Assembly (NCBI RefSeq): GCF_028641065.1
Contig: NW_026575418.1
Coordinates: forward strand, 62,001-126,000
Origin: Leucoraja erinacea
Taxonomy: Eukaryota
Reading direction: 5' to 3'
DNA length: 64,000 nucleotides
Below the pieces are notes generated by a model. The model was not told the DNA's origin and made no database searches. It saw nothing but the letters and a program-made list of their open reading frames with translations. The stretch's first letter is position 1, and each line of letters opens with the position of its first letter. Positions 18,126 through 27,103 of the stretch are shown here, piece after piece. A program made the translations under genes and the position numbers.

Positions 18126-18133
18126 ATGGAGAG
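18126..18133 (+). CDS. aicda: Candidate AICDA-like coding exon 1 (Met-Glu-Se|r)
   Basis: gcaATGGAGAG|gtggga has a good Kozak context (G at -3, G at +4). It is 8 coding nt ending in phase 2, as the 23450 acceptor requires, giving MESCLM versus human MDSLLM. It sits at the end of a unique-sequence island followed by GA-rich intron-like sequence. The donor is only moderate, and this is the only ATG-NNN-AG|GT match I noticed. Confidence 0.5.
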
Positions 18134-24700: not shown

Positions 24701-27103
24701 GTTGGAAGGCGTTGGAGGTTTCAAGGGGGGGGTGAGGAGGTGACGGGGTGATGAGGTGAGTGGATGGGGTAGTGAGGGAAGAGAAGAGAGGGCAGTGAAG
24801 GGGAGAGTGAGGAGGAGGAGGGAAGGGGAGAGAGGGAAGTGGCAGTAGGAGGTGAGGAGAGGACAGGGGGAGGGGAGGGAAGAGGTAGTGGGGGATGAGG
24901 AGAGCTGAGGGCAAGGGGAAGTTTTCTCTCACCCCTGCTTTCTCCCTCTGTCCCCCAGATTATTCCTACTGCTGGGATAATTTTGTGGCGCGTCGGGGGT
25001 CCCAGTTCAAGGGGTGGGACGGGCTCCAGTCAAATTCAGTGAGGATTTCACGTCTGCTCCGTAGAATTCTACAGGTCTGTGGCCCCCATCCTCTGCTCCC
25101 TCCCCCCCCCCCCCATGCTACACACCCTGCACCCCCACATGCCCCCCCCCCCCCCCCCACAAGGTAAGATAATAAAAAAACATAGGACATTATACATACA
25201 GAACTGTGAAGAGGGTGTTAGGATGTTGCAGGGTGACCTGGACAGATTGAGTGAGTGGGCAGATGCGTGGCAGATGCAGTATAATATAGATAAATGTGTG
25301 GTTATCCACTTTGGCAGATTATTATCTCAATGGGGTTAGGTTAGGTAAGGGGGAGGTGCAGCGTGACTTGGGTGTCCTTGTACACCGGTCACTGAAAGTT
25401 GGCTTACAGGTACAGCAGGTAGTGAAGAAAGCTAATGGAATGTTGGCCTTCATAAGAGGATTTCAGTCTAGGAGTAAAGAGGTTCTTCTGCAGTTGAATA
25501 GGGCTCTGGTGAGACCACATCTGGAATATTGTGTACAGTTTTGGTCTCCTAATTTGAGGAAGGACATACTTGTGGTTGAGGCAGTGCAGCGTAGGTTCAT
25601 GAGATTGATCCCTGGGATGGCGGGACTGTCATATGAGGAAAGATGGAAAGGACTAGGCTTGTATTCACTGGAGTTTAGTGGGATATCTTATAGAAACATA
25701 TAAATTGTAAAAGGACTGGACAAGCTAGATGCAGGAATAATGTTCCCAATGTTGGGCGAGTCCAGAACCAGGCTTAGAATAAAGGGGAAAGTACACAAAA
25801 AATGCTGGAGCGGGTGCAGCAGCATCTATGGAGCGAAGGAAATAGGCAACGTTTCGTGCCAAAACCCTTAATCCACTTAGAATAAAGGGGAGGTCATTTA
25901 AGACTGAGGTGAGAAAAAACTTTTTCACCCAGGGAGTTGTGAAGTTATTGAATTCCCTGCCACAGAGGGCAATGGAGGCCAAATCACTGGATGGATTTAA
26001 GAGAGAGTCAGATAGAGCTCTAGGGGCTAGTGGAGTCAAGGGATATAGGGAGAAGGCAGGCACGGGTTATTGACAGGGGACAATCAGCCATGATCACAAT
26101 GAATGGCGGTGCTGGCTTGAAGGGCCAAATGGCCTCTTCCTGCACCTATTTTCTATGTTTCAAGAACGTTGGTGAAGCTGCACTTGGAGTATTGTGCGCA
26201 GTATCGGTCGTTGAGCTGGAACGGGTGCAAAGAAGAATTTACAAAGATGTTACATAGATCCTTGAGACTGACGTCACAGGTATTAGAGGAAGAGATAGAT
26301 TAAACAATCAGAGCCTTTTCCTCACTGGGTGGAAACATCAAAGACTAGAGGGTGTAGCTTTAAGGTGAGAGGGGTCAAGTTTAAAGGAGAATAGCGGCGC
26401 ATGTTTAATTTCACCAAGGTTCGTCGGGACCTGGAGCGCAGTGCCGGAGTGGTGGTGGAGGCAGATATGAGTGGTATTTGGGAGACTTTTAGATAGGCAC
26501 ATGGAAGTGCAGGGACTGGAGGGATATGGATCACTTGCAGCCAGAGGAGATCAGTAATATGGATTCCCTCCCTCGCTCGTCCTCCCTCCTATTCCCTATT
26601 GCTTCTTCCACCCTCCCACGACCCCCCTCTCCCCTCCCTCCATCATCTCATTATTTAAAGTTATCTCAATCGCTCCTCACCCTCATCCTCTTGCTGCCCA
26701 ACAAACCATCCCTCCCTCTCTCCTCCCACCCTCTCCCACGAAACCACTTCACTCTTCTCCTTTCCACCCTCTCTTTCTTCCTATCATCCCCTCCGCTCTC
26801 TCTCCCTCCTTCCACTCTCTCCTCCTACTCCCCATTCCCTCTCCCCTTCATCTCTATTTCTAACATTGTCGCCCTCTCTCTTTTCTTTCCACCCACATCG
26901 CCCCCTCCTCTCCCCCCTCCTACCCCCATATCACCTCCTCCCTTAAACCCCTCCCCTCCCCTTTCCCTCTCTCCCACCTTCCCTCTCCCTCTCCACCTGC
27001 TCCAAGTCTAACATTATCTCTCTCTCTCTCTCTACCACCCCATTTGCAGCCATTGGATGAATTTGAAGACTTCAGCGAGGCCTTCCTGATGCTCGGCCTT
27101 TGA
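18126..27103 (+). CDS. aicda: AID/APOBEC-family cytidine deaminase, AICDA-like (spliced model 18126-18133, 23450-23868, 24959-25074, 27050-27103; 198 aa)
   Basis: The spliced translation contains FLYHFTNARWAKGRHETY, RRDS, SLDFGYLRN, HAE (H56/E58 at 23607/23613), SWSPCAQC (C87/C90 at 23700/23709), ARLYYC, GLRRL, DYSYCWDNF, NSVRISRLLRRIL and a C-terminal PLDEFEDFSEAFLMLGL*. It aligns without gaps to human AID recalled from memory (about 110/196 identical by hand count). All GT-AG junctions keep frame. The symbol reflects homology; orthology versus paralogy is not proven, and exon 1 is tentative. Confidence 0.9.
18134..19740 (+). repeat. G/A-rich low-complexity tracts in AICDA-like intron 1
   Basis: Almost purely purine on the plus strand with GGGGAGGG and (GA)n runs. 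Similar tracts occur at 8400-8930 and 23869-24900. Confidence 0.9.
18740..18777. mobile_element. 38-bp perfect palindrome, same family
   Basis: CAAAGATCCTATAGCAGAGCTCTGCTATAGGATCTTTG is exactly self-complementary. The flanks GTTTATAT and GTTGATAG match at 6/8. Confidence 0.8.
19770..19895 (+). pseudogene. Degenerate truncated copy of AICDA-like intron-1/exon-2 junction
   Basis: gagtttcactcttt plus a pyrimidine tract, then TGC CTG ATG AGC AAG AGG GAG TTT CTG CAC ACT AAC GCC CGC TGG TCC AAG GGG AGG (CLMSKREFLHTNARWSKGR), compared with CLMTKKKFLYHFTNARWAKGR in the real exon. Confidence 0.8.
19945..20116 (+). pseudogene. Second degenerate copy of AICDA-like intron-1/exon-2 junction
   Basis: atgtatgttcgtgcgcgcttac matches 23354-23375 at 21/22 nt. 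It is followed by a pyrimidine tract and KRKSLSHFTTAR*AKG (W codon mutated to TGA). Confidence 0.8.
20730..22400 (-). mobile_element. CR1 fragments in AICDA-like intron 1 (about 20730-21310, 21760-22400)
   Basis: ALVRPHLEYCVQFWSP and GNYTAVSLTSVVGKLLESI motifs. Confidence 0.85.
22835..22921 (+). pseudogene. Third degenerate copy of AICDA-like exon-2 start
   Basis: ccttccctctaacag, then AGC AAG AAG ACG TCC CTG TAC CAC TAC CAC TGG GCC AAG GGG AGG (SKKTSLYHYHWAKGR), then gagcttcact. Confidence 0.7.
23167..23343. mobile_element. Rearranged Penelope-tail mini-insertion in AICDA-like intron 1
   Basis: A minus-orientation tail is joined to a plus-orientation tail piece, flanked by a 14-bp direct repeat CTCCACTATAATGT (23153-23166, 23344-23357). 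Confidence 0.75.
23450..23868 (+). CDS. aicda: AICDA-like large coding exon (equals mammalian exons 2+3 fused)
   Basis: Acceptor is (TC)n-cccatag|C and donor is ACAG|gtacgg. Length is 419 nt, equal to 148+271 nt of the human coding exons 2 and 3. It carries both zinc-coordinating motifs. Confidence 0.95.
24959..25074 (+). CDS. aicda: AICDA-like exon equivalent to mammalian exon 4
   Basis: Acceptor tctgtcccccag|AT, donor CTACAG|gtctgt, 116 nt as in human exon 4. Encodes (D)YSYCWDNFVARRGSQFKGWDGLQSNSVRISRLLRRILQ. Confidence 0.95.
25190..26545 (+). mobile_element. CR1 fragments in the last AICDA-like intron, with a Penelope-tail piece (about 25795-25870)
   Basis: ORF 25296-25703 is CR1 C-terminus, followed by the 3' UTR tail. 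Confidence 0.85.
27050..27103 (+). CDS. aicda: AICDA-like last coding exon (nuclear export signal region)
   Basis: Acceptor catttgcag|CCA. 54 nt encoding PLDEFEDFSEAFLMLGL*, matching human exon 5 (PLYEVDDLRDAFRTLGL*) in length and hydrophobic spacing. Confidence 0.9.
   Translation, partial: PLDEFEDFSEAFLMLGL

What the first reader, a model, noticed from the sequence alone, without database searches (positions are those of the whole stretch)
18126..27103. Intact but divergent AID-like deaminase gene that a simple ORF scan only partly reveals
The exons assemble into a 198-aa protein with intact HxE/PCxxC, the RRDS PKA site, the Arg171/174/177/178 patch and a C-terminal NES-like motif. Residues about 52-110 diverge strongly from human AID (for example YRVTWFT to LCLTLYA, C55S, W80L), which is unexpected for a usually conserved enzyme. 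It is either a fast-evolving AICDA orthologue in a repeat-rich region or a lineage-specific AID paralogue. A paralogue would be notable because AID-derived expansions (APOBEC1/3) are mostly described in tetrapods.
Basis: partly seen in the sequence, partly recalled or inferred. Interest (0 to 1): 0.85.

Follow-up and report, generated by a model that had tools for sequence, protein, structure and literature searches.

The report
Fast-evolving AID gene of skates
This is the little skate's ordinary antibody-mutating enzyme gene (AID/AICDA), intact and already in RefSeq; its protein changed about three times faster in the skate lineage than in rays, and selection has conserved it since.

Summary
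Four + strand exons with canonical AG/GT sites (18126-18133, 23450-23868, 24959-25074, 27050-27103) give a 198-aa AID with H56-A-E58, P86-C87-x-x-C90, RRDS38, R171/174/177/178 and a C-terminal NES.

The window is Leucoraja erinacea. RefSeq already annotates the gene (XP_055521283.1, 193 aa, starting at M6).

It is an orthologue, not a paralogue:
- It groups with stingray and manta AIDs (support 96/96) inside the cartilaginous-fish AID clade (100/100).
- It has the cartilaginous-fish exon structure.
- No second AID from either skate appeared in the protein searches.

The divergence is real and lineage-specific:
- The skate stem branch is 0.59 substitutions per site, against 0.12 for the ray stem.
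- Tajima tests count 30-38 unique skate changes against 9-15 ray changes (p 0.0005-0.007).
- 51 residues are skate-specific, enriched in positions 52-110.
- Seven changes hit columns at least 95% conserved across vertebrate AIDs: K34E, F61L, Y76L, W80L, F81Y, K142T, L172I.

The change predates the Leucoraja/Amblyraja split (98% identity). dN/dS since then is 0.125, so the gene is constrained.

The predicted fold best matches human AID crystal structures.

The cause of the burst (relaxed constraint, GC-driven drift or a functional shift) and the enzyme's activity remain untested.

Interest is modest.

The parts
18126..18133 (+). Probable coding exon 1 (ATGGAGAG|gt; encodes M-E and two bases of S3)
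   Evidence: It is the only ATGGANAGGT upstream of exon 2 on the + strand. It is identical at the collinear position in Amblyraja (L001:5082) and matches the annotated shark exon 1, ATGGACAG|gta. The motif alone is not statistically significant.
18134..19800 (+). Purine- and G-rich low-complexity tract at the start of intron 1
   Evidence: GC skew is 0.43-0.93 in 400-nt windows, with GGGAGG-type tandem arrays. The first 1.5 kb of intron 1 has skew 0.81 and 86% purine. Amblyraja is the same; Mobula and three sharks are not.
19811..20094 (+). Two decayed copies of the intron 1/exon 2 junction (19811-19895 and 19945-20094)
   Evidence: blastn gives 72-75% identity to 23354-23513, and tblastn matches residues 4-39 and 8-23. 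One copy contains a stop, and the first lacks the AG acceptor. Both are conserved in Amblyraja and absent from the ray and shark loci.
20981..22364 (-). LINE reverse-transcriptase fragments inside intron 1
   Evidence: The ORFs carry the recurrent 'RRFTRLIPG...LSYEERL' LINE tail found throughout the window. RVT_1 scores 27.8 bits, below the Pfam cut-off.
22855..22900 (+). Third decayed exon-2 fragment in intron 1
   Evidence: blastn gives 76% identity over 55 nt, with a weak tblastn match. The Amblyraja counterpart is L001:9542-9590.
23450..23868 (+). Fused exon 2/3 (419 nt). It encodes residues 3-142, including HAE56-58, PCAQC86-90 and loop 7.
   Evidence: It is one open frame flanked by ...ccatag| and |gtacgg. 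It is 100% identical to RefSeq XP_055521283.1. Pfam APOBEC_N scores 123.9 bits and NAD1 128.5 bits.
23869..24958 (+). Intron 2, almost entirely purine- and G-rich on the sense strand
   Evidence: Length 1090 nt, GC 0.62, GC skew 0.79, 83% purine. Amblyraja gives 0.80 and 83%; the other species range from -0.07 to 0.39.
24959..25074 (+). Exon 4 by human numbering (116 nt; residues 143-181, helix alpha6 with R171/174/177/178)
   Evidence: Flanked by ...cccag| and |gtctgt. Pfam APOBEC_C scores 38.7 bits.
25079..26073 (+). LINE tail fragment in intron 3
   Evidence: The ORFs at 25079-25703 and 25909-26073 have the same LINE C-terminal motif as many other copies in the window. There is no Pfam hit.
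27050..27103 (+). Last exon (54 nt; residues 182-198, NES-like tail, TGA stop)
   Evidence: The acceptor is ...tttgcag|. The translation PLDEFEDFSEAFLMLGL* aligns with the shark and ray C-termini.

Best explanation
The locus is the AICDA (activation-induced cytidine deaminase) orthologue of the little skate, and probably its only copy.

Inferred mechanism, from homology. It is a zinc-dependent deaminase that converts dC to dU in single-stranded DNA. H56, C87 and C90 hold the zinc and E58 is the proton shuttle. The enzyme initiates somatic hypermutation of antigen-receptor genes. The usual regulatory parts are present: T27 and S38 phospho-sites, the alpha6 arginine patch and a C-terminal nuclear export signal.

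Shown here. The protein went through a burst of amino-acid change on the stem of the skate lineage. This came after the split from stingrays and mantas and before the Leucoraja/Amblyraja split. The burst is concentrated in helix alpha2, strand beta3 and helix alpha3 (residues 52-110), and it shifted composition towards amino acids with GC-rich codons. Since then the gene has been under purifying selection, so it encodes a protein that is in use.

Inferred. F61L, Y76L, W80L and F81Y are a compensated repacking of the buried alpha2/beta3 core rather than damage.

Not resolved. Whether the burst was relaxed constraint plus GC-driven drift or a functional shift.
For: Identity:
- 100% match to RefSeq 'single-stranded DNA cytosine deaminase [Leucoraja erinacea]' XP_055521283.1.
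- Pfam AID/APOBEC models score 168-171 bits.
- By sequence, the best single-domain PDB match is human AID, 5W0Z, E 4e-63.
- The AlphaFold2 model (pLDDT 76.5; 82-91 across the divergent region) has human AID crystal structures as its top 8 Foldseek hits (5W0R, 5JJ4, 5W1C, 5W0Z; TM 0.74-0.79).

Orthology:
- In the ML tree, skates plus rays get 96/96 and Chondrichthyes 100/100.
- The fused 419-nt exon 2/3 and the 116- and 54-nt exons are the same as in Mobula, Heterodontus, Scyliorhinus and Mustelus.
- No other skate AID turned up in the protein searches or clusters.

Acceleration:
- The skate stem is 0.59, against 0.12 for the ray stem.
- Codon positions 1+2 give 0.257 for skates against 0.084 for Mobula. 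Position 3 gives 0.837 against 0.524.
- Tajima tests have p 0.0005-0.007.
- Skates deviate at 7 of 68 near-invariant columns, where the median AID deviates at 0.

Constraint:
- Leucoraja against Amblyraja shows 10 synonymous and 4 non-synonymous differences. dS is 0.074, dN 0.009 and dN/dS 0.125; the binomial p is 0.0003.
- The CDS is 97.6% identical, against about 90-95% for the collinear non-coding DNA.
- Net charge is kept at +11, within the +10 to +14 range of the relatives.
Against: - No transcript, expression or enzymatic data were available here.
- Seven residues that are at least 95% conserved in other vertebrate AIDs are changed. One is W80, where the human mutation W80R abolishes deamination (PMC12249777).
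- Cod AID shows that an AID with every hallmark motif can be almost inactive (PMC9795746). Intact motifs therefore do not prove normal activity.
- Single-copy status rests on annotated proteomes, not on a whole-genome search.
- Synteny could not be tested. No neighbouring genes lie within 10 kb in the comparison loci, and the histone genes downstream in the window have no counterpart there.
Confidence: 0.85

Rival explanations
1. The burst reflects a functional shift. Skate AID would have been retuned, for example in thermal optimum, catalytic rate or hotspot preference, in the way AID is cold-adapted and attenuated in the cod lineage. It would then have been fixed by selection. This is a reading of the cause, and it is compatible with orthology.
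For: - The ratio of position 1+2 to position 3 branch length on the skate stem (0.31) is about twice that of Mobula (0.16) and 4-5 times that of the shark tips (0.06-0.07).
- Changes cluster in residues 52-110 and in loop 7.
- Strong constraint follows the burst, with dN/dS 0.125.
- In bony fishes the thermal optimum of AID tracks habitat temperature, and a motif-intact AID can be nearly inactive (PMC9795746).
- From my own knowledge, not tested here: Leucoraja and Amblyraja are cold-temperate to boreal, while Hypanus and Mobula are warm-water.
Against: - The ratio is far below 1, so there is no gene-wide signal of positive selection.
- Third-position change is also 1.6 times higher on the skate stem.
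- No branch-site test could be run.
- No biochemical data exist.
Confidence: 0.3
2. The burst is non-adaptive. A period of relaxed constraint, combined with GC-biased substitution pressure at this GC-rich, repeat-laden locus, drove amino acids towards GC-rich codons. Function stayed essentially unchanged.
For: - GC at second codon positions is 0.475 in skates, against 0.39-0.42 in the relatives.
- GARP/FYMINK residue counts are 56/37 in skates, 49-51/41-42 in rays and 45-48/50-55 in sharks. This is a graded batoid trend.
- The third-position branch is also longer in skates.
- The locus is GC-rich, 0.55-0.66 around the exons.
Against: - GC3 in skates (0.76) is no higher than in Heterodontus (0.79) and is below Mobula (0.90). 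Mobula kept the conserved protein, so GC pressure alone does not predict the protein change.
- Near-invariant buried residues changed together.
Confidence: 0.45
3. It is a skate-specific AID paralogue. The canonical aicda would lie elsewhere in the genome or have been lost.
For: - The branch is long and near-invariant residues are changed.
- RefSeq calls the Amblyraja protein '...deaminase-like'.
- Partial duplications of the exon 2 junction in intron 1 show that the locus has duplicated segments.
Against: - It is sister to the ray AIDs with 96/96 support.
- The exon structure and phases are the same as in other chondrichthyan aicda genes.
- It shares residues specific to batoids.
- No second AID from either skate appears among the top 120 profile hits or inside the shark and ray 90% clusters.
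- The window holds no second copy.
Confidence: 0.05
4. It is a decaying or non-functional gene that happens still to be open.
For: - W80L and six other changes fall at conserved positions.
- The introns are filled with repeats and LINE fragments.
Against: - The 198-codon frame and all splice sites are intact in two genera.
- dN/dS is 0.125 with p 0.0003.
- The CDS is more conserved than the flanking DNA.
- The catalytic and regulatory motifs are kept.
- The fold is predicted with confidence in the divergent segment.
Confidence: 0.03

Closest known systems
AID of stingray and manta ray (Hypanus sabinus XP_059816583.1, Mobula birostris XP_072106424.1)
   Same: Both are 198 aa with no indels and have the same exon structure. 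They share the batoid residues: PHP in loop 7 and W-D-G-L at 162-165. They are the sister clade in the tree.
   Different: Identity is only 65%. The rays keep the vertebrate consensus Y76-R-L-T-W80-F81, F61, K34 and K142, and deviate at 0 of 68 near-invariant columns where skates deviate at 7.
Human AID (PDB 5W0R, 5W0Z, 5W1C, 5JJ4)
   Same: The zinc and catalytic residues are the same, as are T27, S38, the alpha6 arginine patch and the NES. The predicted fold matches at TM 0.74-0.79 and rmsd 2.3-2.9 A.
   Different: Identity is 56% overall and 47% in residues 52-110. By my knowledge of the human gene, its exons 2 and 3 are separate; in the skate and every other cartilaginous fish tested they are one exon. 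Polypterus confirms the split state in a bony fish.
Atlantic cod AID (Gadiformes; PMC9795746)
   Same: It is a full-length aicda with all hallmark motifs in a cold-water lineage. It is a precedent for lineage-specific functional change in AID.
   Different: Cod AID deviates at none of the 68 near-invariant columns (P0125), and its near-inactivity was shown biochemically. For skate AID the sequence change is larger, but nothing is known about its activity.
Amblyraja radiata AID (XP_032870578.1)
   Same: It is 98% identical, with 4 amino-acid differences. It has the same exon 1 motif, the same pseudo-exon fragments and the same purine-rich introns, in a collinear locus.
   Different: There are 14 nucleotide differences in 582 nt of CDS.

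Membership tests
AID (AICDA), AID/APOBEC zinc-dependent cytidine deaminases | H-[AV]-E ... P-C-x-x-C zinc-binding and catalytic motif | tested here: met
   H56-A57-E58 and P86-C87-A-Q-C90 are in the spliced product. They are invariant columns in the alignments.
AID (AICDA), AID/APOBEC zinc-dependent cytidine deaminases | AID/APOBEC domain by profile, and AID-like fold | tested here: met
   Pfam APOBEC_N scores 168 bits, NAD1 171 and APOBEC2 171. This is 30-50 bits below other AIDs, which give the same ambiguous ranking of models. The top 8 Foldseek hits are human AID, TM 0.74-0.79.
AID (AICDA), AID/APOBEC zinc-dependent cytidine deaminases | Falls inside the AID clade at the position expected from the species tree (orthology) | tested here: met
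   Skates plus rays get 96/96 and Chondrichthyes 100/100, but the skate stem branch is 0.59. No APOBEC2, APOBEC4, NAD1 or lamprey CDA outgroups were included.
AID (AICDA), AID/APOBEC zinc-dependent cytidine deaminases | Gene structure and intron phases of aicda | tested here: met
   The exons are 8, 419, 116 and 54 nt. Mobula and three sharks have the same layout. 419 is the sum of exons 2 and 3 of bony vertebrates, which are split in Polypterus.
AID (AICDA), AID/APOBEC zinc-dependent cytidine deaminases | AID-specific regulatory elements: T27 and S38 (RRxS) phospho-sites, the alpha6 arginine patch, the C-terminal leucine-rich NES | tested here: met
   T27, R35-R36-D37-S38, R171/R174/R177/R178 and F193/L196/L198 align with human AID. 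Their roles are taken from the literature (PMC12249777) and my own knowledge.
AID (AICDA), AID/APOBEC zinc-dependent cytidine deaminases | Conservation of the near-invariant core residues of vertebrate AID | tested here: not met
   Skates differ at 7 of 68 columns that are at least 95% conserved in 96 other AIDs: K34E, F61L, Y76L, W80L, F81Y, K142T, L172I. The median AID differs at 0. This is not a defining feature of the family, but it is the respect in which the gene is atypical.
AID (AICDA), AID/APOBEC zinc-dependent cytidine deaminases | Single-copy gene in conserved synteny | tested here: inconclusive
   No second skate AID is present in the protein collection. There are no informative neighbours within 10 kb in the ray and shark loci. 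The window has a histone cluster downstream that is absent from the comparison flanks. No skate genome could be searched.
AID (AICDA), AID/APOBEC zinc-dependent cytidine deaminases | ssDNA dC-to-dU activity with WRC preference; expression in activated lymphocytes | not testable with these tools
   This needs recombinant enzyme assays and skate RNA-seq or in situ hybridisation.
Lineage-specific AID-derived paralogue (APOBEC1/3-type expansion, NAD1-type clade) | Coexists with a canonical aicda, or forms a clade separate from AID orthologues | tested here: not met
   It is the only AID-like protein of Leucoraja or Amblyraja recovered. It branches inside AID next to the rays. The Pfam NAD1 score is no more distinctive than for human, shark or ray AID.

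The most novel reading that the evidence does not exclude
Skate AID would be a functionally retuned enzyme. Its buried alpha2/beta3 core is repacked (F61L, Y76L, W80L, F81Y) and loop 7 is altered. Catalytic rate, temperature optimum or hotspot preference would have shifted on the stem of the skates. This would be a cartilaginous-fish parallel to the cold-associated attenuation of AID in cod, possibly co-evolving with the germline-joined immunoglobulin genes that, from my own knowledge, are unusually common in skates.
Probability: 0.25. Interest if true: 0.55.

Novelty: already known. Interest (0 to 1): 0.3.

Why it matters
AID is the enzyme that starts antibody hypermutation, and it is usually very conserved. 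Cartilaginous fishes are the oldest lineage that has it.

Showing that this locus is the orthologue removes the more exciting paralogue reading. There is no evidence here for an AID-derived gene expansion outside tetrapods.

What remains is a modest, clean observation. One batoid lineage changed about a quarter of the protein, including residues nearly invariant from sharks to humans, and then conserved the result.

I found no description of this in the literature I could search.

It gives enzymologists a natural variant set for asking how much of the AID core can be replaced, and whether the cod story of a temperature-linked change in AID has a parallel.

It also suggests that the RefSeq skate models lack the 5-residue first exon.

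Tried and rejected
I did not attempt it by another route. I used pairwise NG86, branch lengths partitioned by codon position, and Tajima tests instead.
- Pairwise dS between skates or rays and sharks is near or beyond saturation (0.9-1.7, some undefined). Deep dN/dS values are therefore only rough.
- Stingray (Hypanus) DNA could not be fetched: there was no exact gene record for P0079 or P0144. Mobula is the only ray CDS.
- Synteny gave nothing. The comparison loci have no other called genes within 10 kb, except a vigilin-like gene in Heterodontus. The window's histone genes have no match in those flanks.
- Pfam cannot separate AID from NAD1 or APOBEC2. The top three models score within a few bits of each other for every AID tested.
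- GC-biased conversion as the sole cause is rejected, because GC3 in skates is not raised relative to the other species.
- The exon 1 motif is not significant by chance statistics. I kept exon 1 on comparative grounds only.
- Literature searches found no paper on skate AID.
- The spliced 198-aa protein was never handed to the search tools. Only window references to single exons and the database protein P0001 were used.
- The N runs (1208-1491, 10885-12020) were not touched. The Amblyraja locus aligns only to window 13001-37157.
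Full report
**What is there**

The window has four N runs, all outside the finding.

On the + strand, four segments join into one frame:
- 18126-18133, ATGGAGAG|gt
- 23450-23868, ...ccatag|CTGTCTGATG...ACACAG|gtacgg
- 24959-25074
- 27050-27103, ending in TGA

Together they make 597 nt, a 198-aa protein, and every intron has GT...AG. My first exon 4 coordinates were off by one and gave a stop. The corrected ones are those above.

H56-A-E58, P86-C87-A-Q-C90, T27, R35-R36-D37-S38, R171/R174/R177/R178 and the F193/L196/L198 tail align with human AID without any indel.

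**Whose gene it is**

The exon 2/3 translation is 100% identical to RefSeq XP_055521283.1, 'single-stranded DNA cytosine deaminase [Leucoraja erinacea]'. The window is therefore little skate, and the gene is already annotated.

The RefSeq product has 193 aa and starts at M6.

That exon is not significant as a motif: 2 matches in the window against 0.92 expected. Three comparative facts support it:
- It is the only match upstream on the right strand.
- It is identical at the collinear place in thorny skate.
- It has the same form as the annotated shark exon 1, ATGGACAG|gta, at a similar distance (intron 1 is 5.3 kb here and 5.6-7.5 kb in sharks).

I treat it as probable.

**Orthologue or paralogue**

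Thorny skate (Amblyraja radiata, XP_032870578.1) has a protein 98% identical to this one. Stingray and manta AIDs exist and keep the usual sequence.

I built an ML tree of 25 AIDs. It puts the two skates with the two rays (96/96) inside cartilaginous fishes (100/100).

Skates share batoid-only residues with the rays: P-H-P in loop 7 and W-D-G-L at 162-165.

The fused 419-nt exon 2/3 and the 116- and 54-nt exons are the same in Amblyraja, Mobula, Heterodontus, Scyliorhinus torazame and Mustelus.

No second AID from either skate appears in three places:
- the search seeded by the skate exon;
- the top 120 hits of a profile search;
- the 90% clusters of shark and ray AIDs.

The window itself has no second copy.

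This supports a single orthologue. The caveat is that annotated proteomes were searched, not the skate genomes.

**How divergent it is**

- Identity to human is 56%, against 67-70% for stingray and sharks. In residues 52-110 it is 47%, against 58-61%.
- 51 positions carry a residue seen in none of two rays and four sharks. 23 of them lie in 52-110 (Fisher p 0.008).
- In 68 alignment columns that are at least 95% conserved among 96 other vertebrate AIDs, skates differ at seven: K34E, F61L, Y76L, W80L, F81Y, K142T and L172I. The median AID differs at none. The few sequences with more deviations look like mispredicted isoforms.
- The skate stem branch is 0.59 changes per site, against 0.12 for the ray stem.
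- Tajima relative-rate tests count 30-38 unique skate changes against 9-15 ray changes (p 0.0005-0.007).

**Is it still a working gene?**

Between the two skate genera there are 10 synonymous and 4 non-synonymous differences. dS is 0.074, dN 0.009 and dN/dS 0.125. The binomial p against neutrality is 0.0003.

The CDS is 97.6% identical, while the collinear non-coding DNA is about 90-95% identical. Net charge is kept.

The AlphaFold2 model has a moderate mean confidence (pLDDT 76.5), but blocks covering the divergent segment score 82-91. Its top eight Foldseek hits are the human AID crystal structures (TM 0.74-0.79). By sequence, the best single-domain PDB match is also human AID.

So the burst happened before the Leucoraja/Amblyraja split, and the product has been conserved since.

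**Why the burst?**

Branch lengths on a fixed tree:

| Branch | Positions 1+2 | Position 3 | Ratio |
|---|---|---|---|
| Skate stem | 0.257 | 0.837 | 0.31 |
| Mobula | 0.084 | 0.524 | 0.16 |
| Shark tips | - | - | about 0.06-0.07 |

The ratio is raised on the skate stem but stays far below 1.

Composition moved towards GC-rich codons at replacement sites:
- GC2 is 0.475 in skates, against 0.39-0.42 in the relatives.
- GARP/FYMINK residue counts are 56/37 in skates, 49-51/41-42 in rays and 45-48/50-55 in sharks.

GC3 in skates (0.76), however, is below Mobula (0.90), and Mobula kept the conserved protein.

Relaxed constraint with GC-driven drift and a functional shift both remain possible.

Two literature points bear on function:
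- Human W80R is a buried-residue, loss-of-activity hyper-IgM mutation, while L172A is harmless (PMC12249777).
- Cod AID keeps every hallmark motif yet is almost inactive, and the temperature optima of AID follow habitat (PMC9795746).

Cod AID deviates at none of the 68 conserved columns. Sequence alone therefore cannot predict activity in either direction.

**Verdict**

The gene is a known, annotated AID. The part I did not find described in the searched literature is the skate-specific acceleration followed by constraint.

Interest is modest.

**Side observations**

These are listed separately in the report:
- the exon fusion shared by all cartilaginous fishes tested;
- decayed exon-2 copies and purine-rich tracts in the skate introns;
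- a histone cluster downstream;
- many LINE fragments.

Noticed in passing
window 37280-55915: A histone gene cluster lies 10 kb downstream of aicda: H4 (37280-37597, -), H2B (43890-44258, +), H3 (52666-53079, -) and a second H2B (55544-55915, +). No H2A motif was found. No histone genes occur within 10 kb of aicda in the Amblyraja, Mobula or shark loci.
   Followed up: partly
window 23450-23868; L001-L005; L006:16189-18027: Exons 2 and 3 of bony-vertebrate aicda are a single 419-nt exon in all six cartilaginous fishes examined (two skates, manta, bullhead shark, catshark, smooth-hound). In the bichir Polypterus they are split by an intron of about 1.4 kb. This is either an intron loss in Chondrichthyes or a gain in Osteichthyes. 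I did not find it discussed in the literature I searched.
   Followed up: partly
window 19811-19895, 19945-20094, 22855-22900 (Amblyraja L001:6681-6765, 6815-6962, 9542-9590): Three decayed copies of the intron 1/exon 2 junction sit inside intron 1, at 72-76% identity. At least one has a stop, and the first lacks an AG acceptor. They are conserved between the two skates and absent from the ray and shark loci. They appear to be old partial duplications, and I found no sign that they are used.
   Followed up: partly
window 18134-19800 and 23869-24958: The first 1.5 kb of intron 1 and all of intron 2 are purine- and G-rich on the sense (non-template) strand (GC skew about 0.8, 83-86% purine, GGGAGG-type arrays). 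Amblyraja is the same, but Mobula and three sharks are not. Similar skewed tracts occur elsewhere in the window on both strands, so this may be a general feature of the skate genome. I did not test whether the tracts form R-loops or G-quadruplexes at this locus.
   Followed up: partly
window 18126-18133; L001:5082-5089: The RefSeq proteins of both skates start at M6 (193 aa). A conserved ATGGAGAG|gt about 5 kb upstream would restore the M-E-S-C-L N-terminus seen as M-D-S-C-L in sharks. The skate models probably lack the first coding exon.
   Followed up: yes
window 59827-61608 (+), 29100-29633 (-), and many fragments (e.g. 2444-2791, 9393-9887, 16228-16935, 28638-29096, 45126-45701): The window is full of LINE remains. 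One is a 594-aa open reverse-transcriptase ORF (RVT_1, 99.6 bits). There are also many copies of one C-terminal LINE tail ('VQRRFTR.IPG...LSYEERL...'), some inside the aicda introns.
   Followed up: partly
CDS of L002 (Mobula) and window: Batoid AIDs show a graded shift towards amino acids with GC-rich codons and a loss of lysine (5-6 K, against 11-14 K in sharks). Arginine and net charge are kept. Mobula has GC3 of 0.90.
   Followed up: partly
L003:22050-29356 (-): In the bullhead shark a vigilin-like gene with many KH domains (1254 aa) lies 2.7 kb downstream of aicda on the opposite strand. The ORF scan of the window showed nothing comparable at that distance.
   Followed up: no
L002:~10628-13256 (Mobula intron 2): blastn hits spaced 52 nt apart indicate a long tandem array with a 52-nt period filling much of the manta intron after exon 2/3.
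   Followed up: no
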